From the NCBI RefSeq assembly GCF_046119375.1, contig NW_027362762.1, forward strand, positions 880,028,001-880,092,000: DNA of 64,000 nt, read 5' to 3'. The notes below the pieces were generated by a model. It made no database searches, was not told where the DNA came from, and saw only the letters and a list, made by a program, of their open reading frames with translations. The number at the start of each line of letters is the position of its first letter. Within the stretch, counting starts at the first letter, position 1. Source of the stretch: Phyllobates terribilis (Eukaryota). Positions 1 through 61,500 of the stretch are shown here, in pieces. Position numbers and translations under genes: made by a program.

Positions 1-855
1 CTCCAGCAACTCAAGGATGAGCTCACACATAGGGCCGTCCAGGTCGGAGGCCCCCAGAAAGAGACGCACCGCATTACGACCATCAATGTGGTCAATGCTG
101 GTATAAAGGCTCTCGACATCGGCAGTAACCAAGAGAGTCCCTTCATCCACAGTGACGCCGTCGATCCTCGTGAGGACGTCCGTCGTGTCTTTCACATATG
201 ATGGTAGATTCATTACCAGCGGTTTTAAATAATGATCGATGAATCTGCATATGGGCTCACATAGGCCCCCAATTCCGGACACAATCGGACGTCCAGGAGG
301 ATCGACGGGGTCCTTGTGGATTTTGGGTAGCAAGTAAAAAGTCGGAGTCCTAGGGAAGGTCACCGTCAATCCCTCATATACCTTTTTAGATATTATTGCA
401 CAGTCAAGGGCCTGACTCAAAATATCCTGCAGTATGGCCGAGAAGTGGGTCAAGGGACAGGAGGTTAATTTGGTATACGTGCTTGGATCCCTCAATTGAC
501 GAAATGCCTCTCGCTCATATTTTTGGATCGGCCAGATTACAATGTTACCCCCCTTGTATGCGCCCTTAAAAACTACGTCACTGAGTTCCCGGAGCTGTTG
601 TAATGCCTGGCGATGTTTTAGCGTAAGATTATCAAATCTCCGTTTTGTAGGCAGCTTTAGGAAATCCTCAGTGACGAGTTTAGTAAAAATATCCACTGCA
701 GGGCACAGCGAAAGGGGGGGAAACCTAGTAGATTTAGGCATAATAGATTGGGGAAACCCACCTCGTGGAAGATTCGAATGTTCTTCAGCCAACTCCTCCA
801 AGCACCTCAACGCCTCCTCCTCGACCACCGCAGCATCCATGGTACACATGGGCAT
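1..855 (-). CDS. Penelope-like element (PLE) reverse transcriptase, N-terminal part; runs off the window start
   Basis: Hand translation of the minus strand from the ATG at 855 gives no stop down to base 1. Motifs: FDNLTLKHRQALQQL, FKGAYKGGNIVIW, YEREAFRQLRD, FYLLPKIHKDPVDPPGRPIVSG, LPSYVKDTTDVL, LVTADVESLYTSIDH, all typical of PLE RT. Absent from the ORF track, probably because no stop lies inside the window. Confidence 0.92.
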   Translation of the reverse strand, partial: MPMCTMDAAVVEEEALRCLEELAEEHSNLPRGGFPQSIMPKSTRFPPLSLCPAVDIFTKLVTEDFLKLPTKRRFDNLTLKHRQALQQLRELSDVVFKGAYKGGNIVIWPIQKYEREAFRQLRDPSTYTKLTSCPLTHFSAILQDILSQALDCAIISKKVYEGLTVTFPRTPTFYLLPKIHKDPVDPPGRPIVSGIGGLCEPICRFIDHYLKPLVMNLPSYVKDTTDVLTRIDGVTVDEGTLLVTADVESLYTSIDHIDGRNAVRLFLGASDLDGPMCELILELLE

Positions 856-2200
856 TCGGGGAGGTAATGTCAGGAGAATACTTGCCCAGAAAGAGTTACA
901 GTGGATTATGCGTTTGGGCACAGTGACACCAAATGGCCTAAATGAATCTTTAAGTTTTTCGTCATTCTTGTAGCCATATGTCGTTTTCTGCACACTTTAT
1001 TCCCACACATATAATATCTCTGTGTGAGTTTTCAGTGGTCAAAATATGGGGTAACATATACATTTTATGCAATTTTTTTAAAATTGATGCTTTTATTAAT
1101 TCATTTTCTCCTTCTCTTCTTATTATTCTTTCTATTAGTCCATTATTGCGGAACTCCTCTTTGAAATAACTATCCTCATATGGAGAGCAGTGAGATTGAA
1201 ACCATGTTGGGATTTTCCCCGATGAGAGCAACGACTTATTTGGACCTTTGATCAAGATTGATCATATTACCCAGGCTATTCTATATGTATCTAATTGTGC
1301 CTGTAACTGATCATATGTTCCTTGTTGAATTTGTTAATGCTGCTCTTATTTCACTTCTATTGTACCATCTTATCTGCTCCCCATCTGGCCCTTTAATTTC
1401 AGCTGTGCCGATGGCTTACGTGGTGCGCGCGTGCTGGTGCGGGGGGGTTCGCGGCGCGCGTGCGCCCGGCCGTCTATATGCTGTGCTGCGCCTGCGTGGG
1501 TTCTCTTGGACCCGCGCATGCGCGGTTTATGCTTGACGGCCGGGGCGCGCGCGGCGCGTTCCCTGACCCGCGCGCATGCGCCGTATTGGCATCTGCTCCA
1601 CGTCATGTGATCGGCGGGACGCGCCCCCGGCATAGCTGGCCACTTCCGGGTGCGCGTCCCGCTTCACAGCTGTTTACACTTGGGGCCATCCAATAGGATA
1701 CGTAATGCACATATATGTACACGCAGTATAGGGCAATATACTGACATCACCTGCCCTTGAGAAAGCGGTGAGATATACCGCGAAACGCGCGTTGGGCTCT
1801 TCTGACCACCTTCCTCCCCCCCTCCTTTTGGGCTGTGCTTTCCTGCCAGGTAATGAGTTTATGGAACTATAATGTGTGAGCACCTTAATTCTGACAAAGA
1901 GTCTCCCATAACATATTAAGGGCGACTTTTACTTATATTAGCAGGTCTATATGTATTTGGGCTGACCTCTGTGTCTTTACCCATTGCCATTTTGTGATAT
2001 TGAATGTTCACTATTTTGTTATTTATTATTTCTCTACTATTGTGGGCAAATGTGCAATTCTATAGATCCATAGATCTATTATGATCCTACTATTTACAAT
2101 GTACCTGGCTTGAAAAGCTACTTTCCAATTACCACCTGGTTTCCTTTTCTATTGACAATTTTTATGTATATTTCACCAATAAACTTTATTTTTGCAATAT
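848..2200 (+). mobile_element. Inverted pseudo-LTR of the PLE: GIY-YIG C-terminal tail plus 3' UTR
   Basis: The + strand 848-973 reads MGIRGGNVRRILAQKELQWIMRLGTVTPNGLNESLSFSSFL*, the conserved W..L.T..P.GLN end of PLE endonucleases, opposite in orientation to the RT. It is followed by a UTR-like tract with a hammerhead motif (1753-1797) and AATAAA at 2178-2183. Right boundary approximate. Confidence 0.8.
1753..1797 (+). ncRNA. Minimal type I hammerhead ribozyme, variant core
   Basis: GCCC-TTGAGAA-A-GCGGT(gagatat)ACCGC-GAAA-CGCGCG-TT-GGGC: 4-bp stem I, 5-bp stem II, palindromic stem III (ACGCGCGT), cleavage triplet GUU. Confidence 0.7.
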
Positions 2201-3144
2201 ATGCTGAGCTGTTCTCTTTTTATAGTGAATTCTCATATTGCGCACTGTGAGGATTCTCTGATGCCGGGAGCAGCGGGCAATTTGCATACATGCTGTCACA
2301 TGCCGACTGGTCGTGCGCGGCCTCACTCAATGCAAGTGAGGCCGGACATGTCTAGTTGGAAGTATACAAATCGCATACGTACGGTCACATGACCGTCCAC
2401 TTCCAGCGCAGGAGAATCCTCGCAGTGCGCACGCTATGAATATTCACAATGGTTGTCCTGCATCGGGGTACAAGTCTGCAGTCACATAGAGTACCCAAAG
2501 GTTGGAGAAACCCCTTTAAAAATCATTGCGCGCTTTATCTATAAAACTTGACCAGCCACTTCTGATAGACTGCAGAGGTTGCTGACAACAAAGTCAACAA
2601 GTAAATGTATTATTGAAAATCTCTCAGTTCTCAGGAATAGAGAAGATTTTTGTTTTTGCAAACTCTTTGCAATTTTCCTCATTTATGATTATGAGAAAAT
2701 CCCATTAATAGGAAATCGTTAAAATAGCAATACACAGCAATACAGCAATATAGAGGAAAACAAGAAGGAAAATATGGCACTAGTATCAGAAGATTTACGT
2801 TCAGATTTTATGTTCTTTCCCCAAACATACCTAGATAGATTTTTTTATTATAATAAGGGAGGATCTTACCTCTTCCTTTACCTCTCACGAAGATTATGCA
2901 AATGAAATAGCTGAAGAGGGGAAGTACAATCTTGTTCTGACTAAATGTAATGTTTATGTCAGAACTTCATCAAGAGTCAGTTTGTATCCTCCCTTTTACA
3001 TCTACGAAGAGAAGGTTCTCCCTGATAAGAAGCCACATCTGTCTTTGAAAATTATCTCTGCACATCCAACAACCTACAAACTCAGCGAAAAGAAAACTAT
3101 CACACATTGCAATTTTCAGATACTATATATGAATACTTTTCTAT

Positions 3145-3148
<4 letters not shown>

Positions 3149-3202
<54 letters not shown>
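3149..3202. repeat. (TA)n microsatellite abutting the Tc1 left end
   Basis: Uninterrupted TA run directly before the Tc1 terminus CAGTACAGACC. Confidence 0.95.
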
Positions 3203-3205
<3 letters not shown>

Positions 3206-4790
3206 TACAGACCAAAAGTTTGGACACACCTCATTTAAAGATTTTTCTGTATTTTCATGACTATGAAAATTGTACATTCACACTGAAGGCATTAAAACAA
3301 TGAATTAACACATGTGGAATTATATACTTAACAAAAAAGTGTGAAACAACTGAAAATATGTCTTATATTCTAGGTTCTTCAAAGTAGCCACTTTTTGCTT
3401 TGATGACTGCTTTGCACACTCTTGGCATTCTCTTGATGAGCTTCAAGAGGTAGTCACCGGAAATGGTTTTCACTTCACAGGTGTGCCCTGTCAGGTTTAA
3501 TAAGTGGGATTTCTTGCCTTATAAATGGGGTTGGGACCATCAGTTGTGTTGTGCAGAAGTCAGGTGGATACACAGCTGATAGTCCTACTGAATAGACTGT
3601 TAGAATTTGTATTATGGCAAGAAAAAAGCAGCTAAGTAAAGAAAAACGAGTGGCCATCATTACTTTAAGAAATGAAGGTCAGTCAGTGCGAAAAACTGGG
3701 AAAACTTTGAAAGTGTCCCCAAGTGCAGTTGCGAAAACCATCAAGCGCTACAAAGAAACAGGCTCACATGAGGACCGCCCCAGGAAAGGAAGACCAAGAG
3801 TCACCTCTGCTTCTGAGGATAAGTTTATCCGAGTCACCAGCCTCAGAAATCGCAGGTTAAAAGCAGCTCAGATTAGAGACCAGGTCAATGCCACACAGAG
3901 TTCTAGCAGCAGACACATCTCTTCAACAACTGTTAAGAGGAGACTTTGTGCAGCAGGCCTTCATGGTAAAATAGCTGCTAGGAAACCACTGCTAAGGACA
4001 GGCAACAAGCAGAAGAGACTTGTTTGGGCTAAAGAACACAAGGAATGGACATTAGACCGGTGGAAATCTGTGCTTTGGTCTGATGAGTCCAAATTTGAGA
4101 TCTTTGGTTCCAACCACTGTGTCTTTGTGCGACGCAGAAACGGTGAACGGATGGACTCTACATGCCTGGTTCCCACCGTGAAGCATGGAGGAGGAGGTGT
4201 GATGGTGTGGGGGTGCTTTGCTGGTGACACTGTTGGGGATTTATACAAAATTGAAGGCATACTGAACCAGCATGGCTACCACAGCATCTAGCAGCGGCAT
4301 GCTATTCCATCCGGTTTGCATTTAGTTTGACTATCATTTATTTTTCAACAGGACAATGACCACAAACACACCTACAGGCTGTGTAAGGACTATTTGACCC
4401 AGAAGGAGAGTGATGGGGTGCTATGCCAGACGATGTGGCCTCCACAGTCACCAGACCTGAACCCAATCGAGATGGTTTGGGGTGAGCTGGACCGCAGAAT
4501 GATGGCAAAAGGGCCAACAAGTGCTAAGCATCTCTGGGAACTCCTTCAAGATTGTTGGAAGATCATTTCCGGTGACTACCTCTTGAAGCTCATCAAGAGA
4601 ATGCCAAGAGTGTGCAAAGCAGTCATCAAAGCAAAAGGTGGCTACTTTGAAGAACCTAGAATATAAGACATATTTTCAGTTGTTTCACACTTTTTTGTTA
4701 AGTATATACTTCCACATGTGTTAATTCATAGTTTTGATGCCTTCAGTGTGAATGTACAATTTTCATAGTCATGAAAATACAGAAAAATCT
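3203..4790 (+). mobile_element. Tc1/mariner DNA transposon, right terminus truncated
   Basis: Left end TA|CAGTACAGACCAAAAGTTTGGACACACC. The long inverted repeat (about 3240-3400 vs 4630-4790) is present, but the outermost roughly 35 bp of the right end are missing. Confidence 0.92.
3614..4666 (+). pseudogene. Tc1 transposase (DD34E) with two in-frame nonsense codons
   Basis: Paired-like HTH, GRPR, WSDESKFE, FQQDND, WPPQSPDLNPIEMVW. ORFs 3614-4291 and 4394-4666 share a frame; stops at about 4289 and 4328. Confidence 0.93.
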
Positions 4791-17731: not shown

Positions 17732-18143
17732 ATGTCTTTGAAGGCTGTGTTACTGGCTGGCCGGGCTGTGCGGGGGAGGCTGCCGCTGTCCTCTATGTGC
17801 GGCGGTGCCCGGGCCGTGCACGGCGCTGCTCTCCGCTCTTCTGCTCGCCCGTCTCTGCTGGTGGCTGCGGGCGCCGCGGTGACTGCCGGGCTGGTAGCGG
17901 GGTACAGTCATCTGCAGCGGGCGGACATGGCCTCGGTGGACCGCGGGCAGGATCTGGAGAAGCGCATCGCGGAGTTCATGGCTCCGCCGGTCACTGAGCT
18001 GGAGAGGCTGCGGCGGAGCGGGGACGACATGAAGACCCGCATGGAGCTGCTCATCATGGAGACCCAGGCGGAGGTGTGCCGGGCGCTGGAGGCGGCGGAC
18101 GGGGGGGCCGGCTTCACAGTGGACTGCTGGCAGAGGACGGAGG
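17732..18143 (+). CDS. CPOX: CPOX exon 1: mitochondrial presequence, hydrophobic sorting segment and start of the catalytic domain
   Basis: MSLKAVLLAGRAVRG...LLVAAGAAVTAGLVAG...QRADM...FMAPPVT...MKTRMELLIMETQAEVCRALE; donor G|GTGAGT, phase 1. Confidence 0.95.
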
Positions 18144-18172
18144 GTGAGTGATGGACTGCAATGGAGTGGTGT

Positions 18173-20040
18173 CAGGTGCCCCTCCCCCCCCCCCCCCCCC
18201 CCCGCCGCCGGGGGCACTACAGGTGCCAGAGTGCCCCCCTCCCCGTACTGTTGCCGGGCGCAGTACAGGTGCCAGAGTGCCCCCCGCACTGCCGCCGGGC
18301 GCAGTACAGGTGCCAGAGTGCCCCCCCCTCCCCGCACTGCCGCAGTACAGGTGCCAGGGTGCAGCCCCCCCTCCCCGCACTGCCGCCGGGCGCGGTACAG
18401 GTGCCAGAGTGCCCCCCGCACTGCCGCCGGGCACGGTACAGGTGCCAGAGTGCCCCCCGCACTGCCGCCGGGCGCGGTACAGGTGCCAGAGTACCCCCCG
18501 CACTGCCGCCGGGTGCGGTACAGGTGCCGGAGTGCCGCCCCCCTCCCCGCACTGCTGCCAGGCACAGTACAGGTGCCAGAGTGCCCCCTCCCCGCACTGC
18601 CGCCGGGGGCAGTACAGGTGCCAGAGTGCCCCCCCCCCCTCCCTGCACTGCTGCCGGGCGCAGTACAGGTGCCAGAGTGCCCCTCCCCGCACTGCCGCCG
18701 GGCGCAGTACAGGTGCCAGGGTGCAGCCCCCCTCCCAGTACTGCCGCCGGGCACAGTACAGGTGCCAGGGTGCCGCCCCCCTCCCCGCACTGCTGCCAGG
18801 CACAGTACAGGTGCCAGAGTGCCCCCTCCCCGCACTGCCTGCCCCCTCCCCGCACTGCCGCCGGGGGCAGTACAGGTGCCAGAGTGCCCCCCCCCCCTCC
18901 CTACACTGCCGCCGGGCGCAGTACAGGTGCCAGGGTGCAGCCCCCCTCCCAGTACTGCCGCCGGGCACAGTACAGGTGCCAGGGTGCAGCCCCCCTCCCC
19001 GTACTGCCGCCGGGCGCAGTACAGGTGCCAGGGTGCAGCCCCCCTCCCAGTACTGCCGCCGGGCACAGTACAGGTGCCAGGGTGCCGCCCCCCTCCCCGC
19101 ACTGCTGCCAGGCGCAGTACAGGTGCCAGAGTGCCCCCTCCCCGCACTGCCTGCCCCCTCCCCGCACTGCCGCCGGGGGCAGTACAGGTGCCAGAGTGCC
19201 CCCCCCCCCTCCCTACACTGCCGCCGGGCGCAGTACAGGTGCCAGGGTGCAGCCCCCCTCCCAGTACTGCCGCCGGGCACAGTACAGGTGCCAGGGTGCA
19301 GCCCCCCTCCCCGCACTGCCGCCGGGCGCAGTACAGGTGCCAGGGTGCAGCCCCCCCTCCCCGCACTGCCGCCGGGCACAGTATATGTGCCAGGGTGCAG
19401 CCCCCCCTCCCCGCACTGCCGCCGGGTGCGGTACAGGTGCCGGAGTGCCGTCCCCGCACTGCCGCCGGGTGCAGTACAGGTGCCGGAGTGCCGTCCCCCC
19501 TCCCCGCACTGCCGCCGGGTGCGGTACAGGTGCCGGAGTGCCGTCCCCCCTCCCCGCACTGCCGCCGGGTGCGGTACAGGTGCCGGAGTGCCGTCCCCCC
19601 TCCCCGCACTGCCGCCGGGTGCGGTACAGGTGCCGGAGTGCCGTCCCCCCTCCCCGCACTGCCGCCGGGTGCGGTACAGGTGCCGGAGTGCCGTCCCCCC
19701 TCCCCGCACTGCCGCCGGGTGCGGTACAGGTGCCGGAGTGCCGCCCTCCCCGCACTGCCGCCGGGCACGGTACAGGTGCAGGAGTGCCGCCCCCCCCTCC
19801 CCGCACTGCCGCCGGGCGCTGTACAGGTGCCGGAGTGCCGCCCCCCCCCCCCCCTCCCCGCAGTGCCGCCGGGCGCGGTACAGGTGCCGGCCCCCCCTCC
19901 CCGCAGTGCCGCCGGGCGCGGTACAGGTGCCGGCCCCCCCTCCCCGCAGTGCCGCCGGGCGCGGTACAGGTGCCGGCCCCCCCCTCCCCGCAGTGCCGCC
20001 CCCCCCTCCCCGCACTGCGGCCGGGCGCTCTACAGGTGTC
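18173..20040. repeat. GC-rich minisatellite (units of about 40-50 bp) in CPOX intron 1
   Basis: Unit like TCCCCGCACTGCCGCCGGGTGCGGTACAGGTGCCGGAGTGCCGTCCCCCC (50-bp period at 19501/19551), with a higher-order duplication of about 310 bp. Confidence 0.97.
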
Positions 20041-20347
20041 AGGCTGTGTATTGTGCACTCTATACTTTACTCCGCATTATGACGCTAGAGAATGTGACCT
20101 GTACAAAGAGAATTCCTCAGCTTAGTACAGATTTCCGCCCGGTAGACCGCTGCTTCCAATCATCAGCGCTGCTGTGGCCACCGTGTTTGCGGCGTGCTGG
20201 CACCTGTGTCACCCATAGAATGGTCTGTGCACCTGGTGAAATGTCCTGCTGAGGCGTCTGGATGTGGCCTTTGCGGGCATGCTGGAGTTTGTAGTGTGGC
20301 TCTGTGCCTCCATTACTGCCCTCACTTTCCTCCTGTTCTCCTTGTAG

Positions 20348-33000: not shown

Positions 33001-36000
33001 TCTCTGCGTGTGGACATCCCTCCCCCTATGGCTTGCTTTAACACCAAGAGAAGGGAATTCATGGAGAGATGTCAGAAGGCGTTGTACAGCACTCGGCTAA
33101 ATAGAGTTTATAGACACTATCGCAGAAAACGGTAGAAATATATATTAATTAACACTATTTAAAAAGTTGATTAACTTTCCATTAGGAAGAAAATGAACAA
33201 CACAACAAGTTCAATACAAAGCTAGCATTGCCTTTATGTGCACCCCAAGCTGAAAGAGCCCAAAATACCACCAATATCACCAGCACTGAAACAATAGCAG
33301 TGTCATGTATATAATATTCACTTACTATTTTTACCCAAAGTAATAATATGAAAGTCAATACTCAGCCAAAAATATTGCAGTTTTAACCCCCATAGTACAG
33401 CCGCATGCCTGGACAAGGTGGCTGCCACTATGACTGACTAAGATTAAACTGTCTCCTGTTCTGTTCCCTCGTGTTGTCATCTCAGTTTTTTTTCATTTCA
33501 AACTTATAGATTCATCCAGGGTGCAGGGCTGCAAATAAGAACAGTGGTAGATCATGTATTAACCCAGAAAATTAAGTACGGTATTTGTAATTTGTAGCAT
33601 CTCAATTTTTCAATGGTAACCACACAGCCTCACTGCGCACGCGCGGGACTAGCGGCCGGACATGTTGAAATGCGCATGCGCCCCACAATAATAGCACTTG
33701 CCGGGAGCAATATTCAGATACATGAGCAGCGCTGCCCCTGACTGAATAGCAGAATCACACCTTTATGACTGAAAATGAGCAGGTAGGACATGGTATATAT
33801 AATGTTATAAAATCATTATACTACCACCGTTTTAATGAAAAAAGCTTGCATCACTAACAAAGCAATGGGGGCAGTGTAGAGAGTAGCTAGGACGTGACAG
33901 GTTCTCTTTCAATAGTCTTTTTAGGAGAGCTGAAGCTGCGATCTTCCTATCGCTTGTGCTACACATAGTAGGGCTTCAGCCCTGCTATGCGTAGCAGAAA
34001 TAATCATCTCCTACAGAGGGGAATAAAAGTATTTAGTCAGCCACCAATTGTGCAAGTTCTCCCTCTTAAAAAGATGAGAGAGGCCTGTAATTGACATCAC
34101 AGGTAGACCTCAACTATGAGAGACAAAATGAGAAAACAAATCCTGAAAATCACATTGTCTGATTTGGAAAGAATTTTTTTTCAAATTTTGGTGGAAAATA
34201 AGTATTTGGTCAATTACAAAAGTTCATCTCAATACTTTGTTATATATCCTTTGTTGGCAATGACAGAGGTGAAACGTTTTCTGTAAGTCTTCACAAGGTT
34301 GGCATACACTGTTGCTGGTATGTTGGCCCATTCCTCCATGCAGATCTCCTCTAGAGCAGTCATGTTTTGGGGCTGTCGCTGGGAAACACGGACTTTCAAC
34401 TCCCTCCAAATGTTTTCTATAGAGTTTAGATCTGGAGACTGGCTAGGCCACTCCAGGACATTGAAATGCTTCTTACGAAGCCACTCTTTCATTGACCTGG
34501 CGGTGTGCTTGGGATCATTGTCATGCTGAAAGACCCAGCCACGTTTCATCTTCAGTGCCCTTCCTGATGGAAGTAGGTTTGCACTCAAAATCTCACGATA
34601 CATGGCCACATTCATTCTTTCATGTACACAGATCAGTCGTCCTGGTCCCTTGGCAGAGAAATAGCCCCAAAGCATGATGCCACCCCTATGCTTCACAGTA
34701 GGTATGGTGTTCTTTGGATGCAACTCAGCATTCTTTCTCCTCCAAACATGCCGAGTTGTGTTTCTACCAAACAGTTCTACTTTCGTTTCATCTAACCATC
34801 TGACATTCTCCCAATACTCTTCTGGATCATTCAAATGCTCTCTAGCAAACTTCAGACGTGCCCGGACATGTAATGGCTTAAGCAGGGGGACACTGGCACT
34901 GCAGGATCTGAGTCCCTGGCGGCCTAGTGTGTTACTGATGGTAGCCTGTGTAACGTTGGTCACAGCTCTCTGCAGGTCATTCACTTGGGCCCCCCGTGTG
35001 GTTCTGGGATTTTTGCTCACCGTTCTTGAGATCATTTTGACCCCACAGGGTGAGATCTTGCGTGGAGCCCCAGATCGAGGGAGATGTCTTCCATTTTCTA
35101 ATTATTGCTCCCACAGTTGATTTCTTCACACCAAGCTGCTTGCCTATTGCAGATTCAGTCTTCCCAGCCTGGGGCAGGGCTACAATTTTGTTTCTGGTGT
35201 CCTTCGACAGCTCTTTGGTCTTCACCATAGTAGAGTTTGGAGTGTGACTGATGAGGTTGCGGACAGGTGTCTTTTTATACTGATCACAAGTTCAAACAGG
35301 TGCCAGTACTACAGGTAATGAGGACAGAGGAGCCTCTTAAAGAAGAAGTTACAGGTCTGTGAGAGCCAGAAATCTTGCTTGTTTGTAATTGACCAAATAC
35401 TTATTTTCCACCAAAATTTTTTAAAAAATTCTTTCCAAATCAGACAATGTGATTTTCAGGGTTTGTTTTCTCATTTTGTCTCTCATAGTTGAGGTCTACC
35501 TATGATGTCAATTACAGGCCTCTCTCATATTTTTAAGTGGGAGAACTTGCACAATTGGTGGCTGACTGAATACTTTTCTTCCCCACTGTATGAGCACCGG
35601 CCACAGGGCGGCACTCACAGCAGATCGGCAATGACAACCACAGGGGTCTCCTGTAGACCCCGGGTTGTCATGCCAACCCATCTGCGCCCCGCGATCATGT
35701 GACAGATGGGCGGTGCTAATGACGCGCATCCGGTTTGTGCAGGTTAAAGGCTGTCAGAGATTGACAGCCGCATCTAACAAGTTAACAGTCGCTGGTGGAC
35801 CGCGATTCCACCCGCGGCTGTTAGGAGCACATGACAGCTGATGAAAAGATGCGGGCTCAGTGCCAGAGCCCGCACCATAGGGGAAGACACAACATATGAC
35901 ATACCTATACGTCATATGTCGTGAAGGGGTTAAAGTTTGTTTTTCTCTGATACCCTGCAGTATTTCAGAGTCACGCATTTATGGCTGAAATCATACAGCC

Positions 36001-59999: not shown

Positions 60000-61500
60000 C
60001 ACGTTCTCTGTCAAGGGTGGTTAGCGGAGGAGACTTCACTGCTGATTCAGCGATCCAGTATCCCCTTTGCTCTGTGAGGGGGGTAAGCAGCGTGGAGTCT
60101 CTATCTGCAGCTGATAGCCCCTGTAGTAGAGGAAGGTAGGTACTGCAGAGTAGGGTGGATTATGTGCTTGAGATTCCTCTCCGGTAGCTGGTTCCATATG
60201 CACACTTCTAGTTTTCTGCAGAAGTGTTGGTGTTGTGTTGAGCGGCTGCATGTATAAGCGCCTAACAGAAGAGGTGATGAGACCGCAGGTAAGGTCTTCA
60301 CTTACGGTACCGACATCCAGGTCCTCAGGGATCCAGAGTGCAGGCGGTCGGTGATGCTTGGAAGGCCGGCAAGGCCGCGTGGTAAGGCTGGTGTTCTCCT
60401 CGGCGTTCCGGCGAGTGGATGAAAATAGCAAGGGGAGGGGTAGGAGCAGAGTCCCAGCCGGTGACTCAATGCTTCCCGCGTTCTCCCGGTGTCGGCATGG
60501 TTGTGACAGTCTGCGTGACGCTTTGTCACGTGGTACATGCCAAGTATGGGAGCCTGTAGGGACCAAAAAGACCTACGCGTTTCAGAAACAATGGTTTCCT
60601 TCCTCAGGGTTGGTACAAGGCTGGTCACGGGTCCCTTTTATATGCATCACATCGTTATGATTGGTTGAATGGCAGCTGCTGCAGATGGATTGCAGCTGTC
60701 ACTCATTGAAGGCAAAGAGTTCAATCTCTGAGTATAAGCCTCTTGGTTTCAGTGTGTCAAGTAAAATCCATTTACTTTCTGTACGTGACATCAGTTTGAT
60801 AAAGTCGCCTTGGCGCCATTGTCTGCGTACCAGTTGTATGCCTGTCACTTGAATGTTTTGAAAAGAGCCCCCATGTTTTTCGGTGAAGTGTTTGGAAAGG
60901 CAATGACCATCAAACTTATTTTTTATGTTACATAAATGCTCATTTATTCCAATGTACATGGGACTTTTTGTTCTCCCTAAATACAATTTTAGACGTGGGC
61001 ATTTGAGGCTATAGATAATCCCTTTGCTCGTACAAGTTATGAAGTCTGATATTTGGTATACCTTTATCGTTTTCAATGTTTTTTTATTTTTTTGTGTGGA
61101 TCTTTTTGCATACCTTACATTTTTTGCAAGGTTAGAAGCCAGTTGTTTCTGCAATATATGGTAGCATTGGACCATTTTTATTTTTATTAGGTGGATATTG
61201 AAAGGAGGGTGCTATCAGGTTACCCAGATTGCAGGCTTTTTTGAAAATGAATCTAGGGTTTTTGGAAATCTTGTCCCCAATGATTTTATCTTTTTTCAGG
61301 ATATCTCAGTGCTTATGTATAATTCTTTTTAGCAGATGGGTATTGGAGTCATACGTTGTGATAATGGGAATGTCAAAATCTGACGCGTTGTACTTGTCTT
61401 TGTTTTTATTCGGGGAACTCTGTATGATTGTTTGCCTGGGTATTTACTTGACCTTATTTTTAGCAGTATTAAGAAGATGTGGGTCATACCATTTTTTCAT
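60000..61500 (-). mobile_element. 5'-truncated Penelope-like element: RT thumb, GIY-YIG endonuclease and 3' pLTR
   Basis: ITTYDSNTHLLKRIIHKH..ILKKD...KACNLGNLIAPS (about 61370-61200); ORF 60699-61175 with FITCTSKGIIYSLKCP.LKLYLGRT...NEH...HF...H...KWILLDTLKPRGL. Boundaries approximate. Confidence 0.85.
60571..60610 (-). ncRNA. Minimal type I hammerhead ribozyme with canonical core
   Basis: Minus strand ACC-CTGAGGA-A-GGAAAC(catt)GTTTCT-GAAA-CGCG-TA-GGT; about 90 nt downstream of the endonuclease stop, on the same strand. Confidence 0.8.

What the first reader, a model, noticed from the sequence alone, without database searches (positions are those of the whole stretch)
1753..1797. Hammerhead ribozyme with a U3-A8 compensatory core instead of C3-G8
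Seen: stem I GCCC/GGGC, core UUGAGAA, one extra A, stem II GCGGU/ACCGC, GAAA, self-complementary stem III ACGCGCGU and a GUU triplet. Known: the canonical core is CUGAnGA, C3 pairs with G8, U3-A8 is a tolerated covariation, and minimal PLE hammerheads are proposed to cleave as dimers through palindromic stem III. Inference: a double change that keeps the 3-8 pair suggests selection for activity in this PLE family rather than decay.
Basis: partly seen in the sequence, partly recalled or inferred. Interest (0 to 1): 0.7.

Follow-up and report, generated by a model that had tools for sequence, protein, structure and literature searches.

The report
Frog Penelope hammerhead with U3-A8 core
This is a real copy of the small hammerhead self-cleaving RNA motif that Penelope-like jumping genes carry, here with a paired U-A swap in its core that was already described for these elements in 2014, so it is a good example of a known kind and not a new one.

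Summary
It is not chance: it is the only hit of a minimal-hammerhead descriptor in the window, with none in 150 shuffled windows. It is also the top hit (28.9 bits, E about 8e-6) of a covariance model built from hammerheads of unrelated Penelope-like elements (PLEs).

The setting fits. The + strand at 839-973 encodes the C-terminal end of a PLE GIY-YIG endonuclease. The hammerhead lies 780 nt downstream of its stop, in sense, in a 5'-truncated arm. That arm abuts, head to head, a second arm on the minus strand (RT N-terminus, 852 to 1).

In 37 distinct hammerheads from 80 metagenomic PLE loci, the 3-8 position is C-G 35 times and U-A twice, and is never changed on one side only. The U-A cases are scattered on the RT tree.

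The U3-A8 PLE variant, the bulged A and the palindromic helix III were all published by Cervera and de la Pena in 2014. This scan had already noted U3-A8 hammerheads at least 23 times on other DNA of this genome.

This copy sits in a truncated arm without a partner.

The parts
1753..1797 (+). Minimal type I hammerhead motif of the PLE kind. Helix I is 1753-1756 with 1794-1797. The core U3-A9 is 1757-1763, followed by a bulged A at 1764. Helix II is the hairpin 1765-1781. G12-A15.1 is 1782-1785. The palindrome ACGCGCGU (helix III in a dimer) is 1785-1792. The predicted cut is 3' of U1793.
   Evidence: Sequence; descriptor scan with shuffles; covariance model R1, 28.9 bits, E 8e-6; dimer cofold.
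839..973 (+). Last 44 codons and the TAG stop (971-973) of a PLE RT-endonuclease ORF (C-terminal end of the GIY-YIG region). This is the start of the 5'-truncated right arm that carries the hammerhead.
   Evidence: tblastn and BLASTP to the C-terminus of P0042 (Ranitomeya imitator PLE protein): 42% identity over 43 aa, pairwise E 3e-10. P0042 residues 351-388 match Pfam GIY-YIG at 22.3 bits, just under the 22.6-bit curated cut-off.
974..1752 (+). 3' untranslated / pseudo-LTR stretch of the right arm between the stop and the hammerhead. It holds an AT-rich part (974-1380), a CpG-rich promoter-like block (1381-1700, CpG o/e 1.20, two GCGCATGCGC palindromes), CCAAT at 1690-1694 and TATA-like TATAGGG at 1727-1733, which starts 26 nt before helix I.
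   Evidence: Sequence; CpG statistics; upstream-motif listing. That all of it belongs to the element is inferred, not shown.
1..852 (-). Left arm: open 284-codon N-terminal part of a PLE reverse transcriptase (motifs FYLLPKIHK, PGRPIVS, DVESLYTSI). It runs off the left edge of the window. Its 5' end meets the right arm head to head at about 838-852.
   Evidence: Translation. 719 relatives, the best being dendrobatid frog PLE proteins (65% to Ranitomeya variabilis, E 1e-112). tblastn map.

Best explanation
The motif is the hammerhead module of a Penelope-like retrotransposon of a dendrobatid frog. It was inherited from its master element with a U3-A8 pair in place of C3-G8.

The insertion has the usual PLE shape of two 5'-truncated arms joined head to head. 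The right arm (+ strand) keeps only the last 44 codons of the RT-endonuclease ORF, its 3' untranslated / pseudo-LTR region, and the hammerhead 780 nt after the stop.

In a complete, tandem PLE the pseudo-LTR promoter would start transcription at or just before the hammerhead. Two hammerhead copies on a longer-than-unit RNA would pair through the palindromic ACGCGCGU to build the missing helix III. Each would then cut 3' of U17, probably helped by the element's own protein, giving unit-length RNA.

Shown: the motif, its non-random nature, its PLE context and strand, and the C-G/U-A-only pattern among PLE hammerheads.

Inferred: inheritance of U3-A8 within this family, dimeric and protein-assisted cleavage, and the promoter. 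At this locus the arm is truncated and has no partner copy, so the motif is most likely a relic of insertion.
For: - The motif is unique in the window and absent from shuffles.
- Model R1, built from unrelated PLE hammerheads, scores it 28.9 bits, E 8e-6, as the top hit of the window.
- A PLE endonuclease C-terminus lies on the same strand 780 nt upstream. In metagenomic PLE loci, 39 of about 40 hammerheads lie on the RT strand, upstream or downstream of the ORF at similar distances; for example L022 has an intact ORF and a hammerhead 734 nt after the stop.
- All PLE hammerheads used for the model share the bulged A, G10.1-C11.1 and a palindromic helix III.
- The 3-8 position is C-G 35, U-A 2, other 0. 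L019 has the identical core UUGAGAA plus A.
- The U-A cases are scattered on the RT tree: 3 changes are needed, and no bootstrap tree fits a single change.
- The RTs nearest to the window (L002, L013) carry hammerheads with a similar helix I and a CGCG helix III, consistent with both arms belonging to one lineage.
- CpG o/e is 0.80 in the open RT arm and 1.2 next to the hammerhead, against 0.49 for the window, which suggests a fairly young insertion.
- Literature: U3-A8 in Schistosoma PLE hammerheads, the bulged base, the palindromic helix III and dimer cleavage (PMC4209133); inverted 5'-truncated copies are typical of PLEs (PMC8557442); in an Anolis PLE hammerhead single 3 or 8 mutants kill cleavage, the double mutant partly rescues it, and cleavage needs the PLE protein (PMC11167929).
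Against: - No other genomic copy of this family could be examined, so fixation of U3-A8 in the family rests only on unchecked earlier notes of this scan.
- That the two arms come from one insertion is inferred. They share no overlapping element sequence inside the window, and the outer ends and target duplication are not visible.
- The 780-nt spacer could hold unrelated DNA: CpG o/e is 0.41 over 853-1380.
- Rfam hammerhead models do not detect the motif.
- The monomer fold is no more stable than shuffles (z 0.04).
- PLE minimal hammerheads cleave poorly in vitro (PMC4209133). In Anolis, cleavage was not needed for insertion in vitro, and no RNA ends were seen at the cut site (PMC11167929).
Confidence: 0.8

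Rival explanations
1. The motif is a genuine inherited PLE module, but its job is not self-cleavage. It would serve as a binding or folding site for the element's protein, or simply ride along with PLEs. The 3-8 pair would then be kept for structure and not for catalysis.
For: In the Anolis PLE, hammerhead mutants did not affect insertion in vitro, and no RNA-seq ends were found at the cut site (PMC11167929). Naiad and Chlamys PLEs thrive without hammerheads (PMC8557442). In vitro activity of minimal PLE hammerheads is low (PMC4209133).
Against: Every catalytic-core position stays at the consensus that supports cleavage across about 40 PLE hammerheads. The Anolis motif does cleave when the protein is present, and it obeys the 3-8 pairing rule.
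Confidence: 0.15
2. The motif is a decayed hammerhead. A canonical C3-G8 motif in this dead copy would have picked up two independent transitions by chance, so the apparent compensation means nothing.
For: The copy sits in a truncated, non-autonomous arm that is free to drift. Both changes are transitions.
Against: All other core positions and all 10 helix pairs are intact, including six CpGs that decay fast in vertebrate DNA. Neither change is in a CpG context. The same core string occurs in an unrelated PLE locus (L019), and one-sided changes are never seen among 37 PLE hammerheads. Earlier notes of the scan report the same core elsewhere in this genome (unchecked).
Confidence: 0.04
3. The motif is a chance match in a host promoter or first exon (the CpG-rich block 1381-1700 with a GT donor-like site at 1849) and is unrelated to the PLE next to it.
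For: A CpG-island-like block with common promoter motifs lies directly upstream. There is a weak Rfam TUG1_3 match (11.3 bits, E 1.8). Over a scan of some 250,000 windows, relaxed hammerhead descriptors must give some chance hits.
Against: E is 8e-6 with a model built from independent PLE data. The PLE endonuclease tail lies on the same strand. The unconstrained features also match: the bulged A, G10.1-C11.1 and a palindromic helix III. The TUG1 match is not significant.
Confidence: 0.01

Closest known systems
Minimal hammerhead ribozymes of Penelope-like elements (Cervera and de la Pena 2014, PMC4209133), including the U3-A8 variant of Schistosoma mansoni Cercyon elements
   Same: Type I topology; short helix I (4 bp); long helix II (6 bp); an unpaired base between A9 and G10.1; the G10.1-C11.1 pair; palindromic helix III that can form only in a dimer; location in the pseudo-LTR on the ORF strand; U3-A8 in place of C3-G8.
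   Different: The host is a dendrobatid frog, not a flatworm. The helix III palindrome is longer (CGCGCG between A15.1 and U16.1) than the 2-4 nt seen in the 38 metagenomic PLE hammerheads. The RT tree suggests an independent origin of the U-A pair.
Poseidon PAc hammerhead of Anolis carolinensis (PMC11167929)
   Same: A vertebrate PLE hammerhead. The 3-8 pair is required, a compensatory double change is partly active, and cleavage is protein-assisted.
   Different: In PAc the ORF start lies inside helix II and the core is C3-G8. Here the motif is 780 nt after the stop, holds no ATG and has U3-A8.
Amphibian satellite-2 / non-LTR retrozyme hammerheads (PMC7229834; bioRxiv 10.64898/2026.07.22.740005)
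   Same: Type I hammerheads with a weak, palindromic helix III that act as dimers. They are related to PLE pseudo-LTRs.
   Different: Those lie in tandem units of about 330 bp and have canonical loop-loop contacts. Here there is a single copy inside a PLE arm, with no tandem unit in the window.
Rfam hammerhead families (Hammerhead_1, _3, _II, HH9, HH10)
   Same: The same catalytic core and three-helix plan.
   Different: There is no match even at E up to 10. The models expect a monomeric helix III and C3-G8.

Membership tests
Hammerhead ribozyme (type I) | Conserved core U4 G5 A6, A9, G12 A13 A14, the A15.1-U16.1 pair, and H17 (not G) at the cut site | tested here: met
   UUGAGAA ... GAAA ... 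U U read from the sequence; aligned to model R1 without core mismatches other than positions 3 and 8.
Hammerhead ribozyme (type I) | Position 3 pairs with position 8 (C-G, or a compensatory pair) | tested here: met
   U1757 and A1762. Among 37 distinct PLE hammerheads the pair is C-G 35, U-A 2, unpaired 0.
Hammerhead ribozyme (type I) | Three helices around the core | tested here: met
   Helices I and II form in the monomer minimum-free-energy fold. Helix III forms only between two copies (cofold -44.5 against -29 kcal/mol).
Hammerhead ribozyme (type I) | Match to curated Rfam hammerhead covariance models | tested here: not met
   No hammerhead family reported at gathering score or at E up to 10. 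This measures the models' coverage of minimal PLE variants and says nothing about the core.
Hammerhead ribozyme (type I) | Site-specific self-cleavage 3' of position 17 | not testable with these tools
   Needs transcription/cleavage assays or RNA end mapping.
PLE minimal hammerhead (Cervera and de la Pena 2014) | Unpaired base between A9 and G10.1, a G10.1-C11.1 pair, and palindromic 15.2-16.2 / loop 3 | tested here: met
   A1764; G1765-C1781; ACGCGCGU. The same features are invariant or nearly so in 19 independent PLE hammerheads.
PLE minimal hammerhead (Cervera and de la Pena 2014) | Lies in the pseudo-LTR of a PLE, on the strand of the RT-endonuclease ORF | tested here: met
   The GIY-YIG C-terminal coding end at 839-973 (+) lies 780 nt upstream on the same strand. 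An RT arm is adjacent, head to head.
PLE minimal hammerhead (Cervera and de la Pena 2014) | Motif and its core variant shared by the other copies of the same element family | not testable with these tools
   No second copy in the window. The genome contigs pattern scan was empty. Only unchecked scan notes speak to this.

The most novel reading that the evidence does not exclude
In PLEs generally, and in both PLE copies of this window, the hammerhead may be the first module of the pseudo-LTR transcript. A TATA box starts 27-35 nt before helix I in 14 of 33 non-redundant PLE hammerheads (background 1%), with a second cluster at -72 to -79. If that marks the real start site, cleavage would remove the capped leader. 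The dimer-only design would then act as a switch between capped mRNA (uncut monomer) and unit-length template RNA (cut when the 5' and 3' copies pair). The frog U3-A8 lineage, whose insertion here looks young, would be a natural active test case of the 3-8 pairing rule. I found no paper in the held library that links PLE, hammerhead and TATA, but the point may have been made in papers that are not held.
Probability: 0.35. Interest if true: 0.5.

Novelty: new member of a known kind. Interest (0 to 1): 0.25.

Why it matters
It adds a vertebrate (poison frog) lineage to the natural hammerheads that replace C3-G8 by U3-A8. Together with the scattered U-A cases on the RT tree, this shows that the compensatory swap arose repeatedly in Penelope-like elements. 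That is natural support for the 3-8 pair seen in crystal structures and in mutant-rescue experiments. It changes nothing fundamental, because the variant, the architecture and the dimer model are all published. The TATA-to-hammerhead spacing seen in passing could help explain what these ribozymes do for the element.

Tried and rejected
- Rfam scans at gathering score and at E up to 10 gave no hammerhead. They gave a weak TUG1_3 match (E 1.8), which I first took as a hint of a host lncRNA exon and then dropped as not significant.
- A search for further copies in the window found none, by pattern with 3 mismatches and by blastn.
- The search for related loci on viral contigs found no PLE.
- A genome contigs pattern scan for family copies was empty.
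- I first read the layout as a hammerhead antisense to, and 900 nt upstream of, the RT start. I dropped that reading once the + strand endonuclease tail at 839-973 was found. The apparent extension of RT homology beyond the ATG (to 888-906) is the reverse reading of that tail.
- An alternative register of the core (N7 deleted, U3-G8 wobble, two bulged A) was rejected. The ungapped alignment fits, and L065 has UUGAUAA, with no G available for position 8.
- A MAFFT alignment of the two promoter-hammerhead regions of the window showed no real sequence homology.
- The sigma-70 scan is irrelevant for a frog.

Full report
**Observation.** The sequence at 1753-1797 (+) reads GCCC / UUGAGAA / A / GCGGUG-AGAUA-UACCGC / GAAA / CGCGCG / U / U / GGGC. 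In hammerhead numbering this gives:
- a 4-bp helix I;
- U3 U4 G5 A6 G7 A8 A9;
- one unpaired A;
- a 6-bp helix II closed by G10.1-C11.1;
- G12 A13 A14 A15.1;
- a palindrome ACGCGCGU that holds A15.1 and U16.1;
- U17, so the predicted cut lies between 1793 and 1794.

**Chance.** A descriptor that accepts either the C-G or the U-A core finds only this site in the window, on either strand. It requires helix I of at least 4 bp, helix II of at least 4 bp, an optional bulge, GAAA, a palindromic insert, U and H. It finds nothing in 150 Markov-shuffled windows. Rfam reports no hammerhead, either at gathering score or at E up to 10. The only nearby Rfam hits are a snoRNA and a TUG1_3 match at E 1.8-5, which I treat as noise. 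The monomer is no more stable than shuffles (z 0.04). Two copies cofold through the palindrome at -44.5 kcal/mol, against -29 for two monomers. That is what a dimer-only hammerhead should do.

**Context.**
- The minus strand from 852 to 1 is an open 284-codon reading frame that runs off the window. It carries the PLE reverse-transcriptase N-terminal motifs FYLLPKIHK, PGRPIVS and DVESLYTSI.
- It has 719 relatives. The best are PLE proteins of dendrobatid frogs: 65% identity to Ranitomeya variabilis, E 1e-112. Earlier notes of the scan call the genome the golden poison frog.
- The hammerhead therefore first looked antisense to the element. However, tblastn with P0042, a Ranitomeya PLE protein that keeps its GIY-YIG endonuclease (Pfam GIY-YIG at 22.3 bits, just under the 22.6-bit cut-off), shows otherwise. 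The + strand at 839-973 encodes the C-terminal end of such an endonuclease, followed by a TAG stop at 971-973. Identity is 42% over 43 aa, with pairwise E 3e-10.
- The locus is thus two 5'-truncated arms joined head to head at about 838-852. The left arm is on the minus strand. The right arm is on the + strand and holds the last 44 codons, a 780-nt untranslated stretch and the hammerhead, in sense.
- An inverted 5'-truncated copy next to the main copy is a textbook PLE arrangement (PMC8557442). It was also noted elsewhere in this genome (unchecked).
- That both arms stem from one insertion is inferred. Their outer ends are not visible, and they share no overlapping element sequence in the window.

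**Independent comparison set.** I therefore collected 80 PLE loci from metagenome contigs by RT homology (33-46% identity).
- With positions 3 and 8 left free, the descriptor gave 22 hammerheads. All were on the RT strand and all had a bulged A. Twenty-one had C-G, one had U-A, and none had any of the other 14 combinations.
- A covariance model built from 19 of them ranks the window's motif first in 64 kb, at 28.9 bits and a rough E of 8e-6.
- On the 80 loci the model finds about 40 motifs, 39 of them on the RT strand.
- Counted on that alignment, the 3-8 pair is C-G 35, U-A 2, with no one-sided change and no unpaired case. The alignment is fitted to the model, which favours C-G, so weak one-sided variants could be under-sampled.
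- One of the U-A cases (L019) has the very same core, UUGAGAA plus A.
- On an RT tree the three U-A-associated elements (window, L019, L065) are scattered. Three changes are needed, and no bootstrap tree allows a single change. This carries the caveat that the window's RT and hammerhead sit on different arms.
- The RTs nearest to the window (L002, L013) carry C-G hammerheads with a similar helix I and a CGCG helix III. This fits a single lineage for both arms.

**Decay or inheritance.**
- Every other core base and all ten helix pairs are intact, including six CpGs.
- CpG o/e is 0.80 in the open RT arm and 1.2 just upstream of the motif, against 0.49 for the window. The insertion therefore looks young.
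- Neither U3 nor A8 is in a former CpG context.
- Two random transitions hitting exactly the two partners of one pair in an otherwise untouched 45-mer is very unlikely.
- Together with the same core in an unrelated PLE, inheritance from a U3-A8 master copy is the best reading.
- Direct proof from family copies is missing. Notes of this scan report U3-A8 hammerheads at least 23 times on other DNA of this genome. One has the same UUGAGAA core, and one follow-up says the lineage conserves the swap. These are unchecked leads.

**Mechanism (inferred from the literature).**
- Cervera and de la Pena (PMC4209133) described minimal hammerheads in both pseudo-LTRs of PLEs. They reported a bulged base after A9, a long helix II, a palindromic helix III and weak cleavage only as dimers or trimers. 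They also reported about 9,000 such motifs in Xenopus tropicalis, and a U3-A8 covariation in Schistosoma Cercyon elements (about 1,300 hits).
- In the Anolis Poseidon element, single C3G or G8C changes abolish cleavage and the double change partly restores it. Cleavage needs the element's protein but is not required for insertion in vitro (PMC11167929).
- By analogy, in a complete element two copies on a longer-than-unit transcript would pair through ACGCGCGU and cut after U17.
- The arm in this window has no partner copy and no ORF, so the motif here is a relic.

**Seen in passing.**
- A second PLE fragment lies on the minus strand: a GIY-YIG part at 61043-60708, a stop at about 60701, and a canonical C3-G8 minimal hammerhead at 60611-60570 (25.1 bits, E 1e-4).
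- In both copies a CCAAT box and a TATA or TATA-like box precede helix I, with the TATA element starting at -31 (second copy) and -26 (the finding's copy).
- In the metagenomic loci, a TATA box starts 27-35 nt before helix I in 14 of 33 non-redundant cases, against a 1% background (binomial p about 1e-19). A second cluster lies at -72 to -79.
- This suggests that pseudo-LTR transcripts begin at the hammerhead. I found no paper in the held library that says so, though Penelope's start site is known to lie in the pseudo-LTR.

**Verdict.** The finding is a new member of a known kind, of modest interest.

Noticed in passing
window 60570-61043 (-): A second, unrelated PLE fragment. It has a GIY-YIG endonuclease part (61043-60708), a stop near 60701, then CCAAT and TATAAAAG boxes, and a canonical C3-G8 minimal hammerhead at 60611-60570 (model R1, 25.1 bits, E 1e-4). 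The hammerhead has a bulged A and a CGCG helix III, and lies only about 90 nt after the stop.
   Followed up: partly
L001-L080 (metagenome PLE loci) and window 1690-1752, 60612-60665: A TATA box starts 27-35 nt upstream of hammerhead helix I in 14 of 33 non-redundant PLE loci (background 1%, p about 1e-19). A second cluster lies at -72 to -79. This suggests that the pseudo-LTR promoter starts transcription at the ribozyme.
   Followed up: partly
window 1381-1700: A CpG-island-like block (GC 67%, CpG o/e 1.20) with two GCGCATGCGC palindromes, a CCACTTCCGG site and a local inverted repeat (1614-1662), directly upstream of the hammerhead. It could be the element's promoter or a host promoter.
   Followed up: no
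window 1846-1856 (+): A splice-donor-like CAG|GTAATGAG sits 52 nt after the hammerhead. Penelope and some other PLEs keep an intron in the pseudo-LTR leader.
   Followed up: no
window 3614-4291 (+) and 34229-35035 (-): Tc1/mariner-type transposase fragments: HTH_Tnp_Tc3_2 at 3614-4291, and DDE_3 plus HTH_Tnp_Tc3_2 at 34229-35035 (Pfam). A long (TA)n run at about 3140-3213 lies beside the first.
   Followed up: no
window 18000-20200: A 2-kb stretch of 76% GC with long open frames in all six frames. It is probably a GC-rich simple or low-complexity repeat.
   Followed up: no
L019:90-129, L065:1513-1550: Two metagenomic PLE loci from different RT clades carry U3-A8 minimal hammerheads. L019 has the same core string as the frog motif.
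   Followed up: yes
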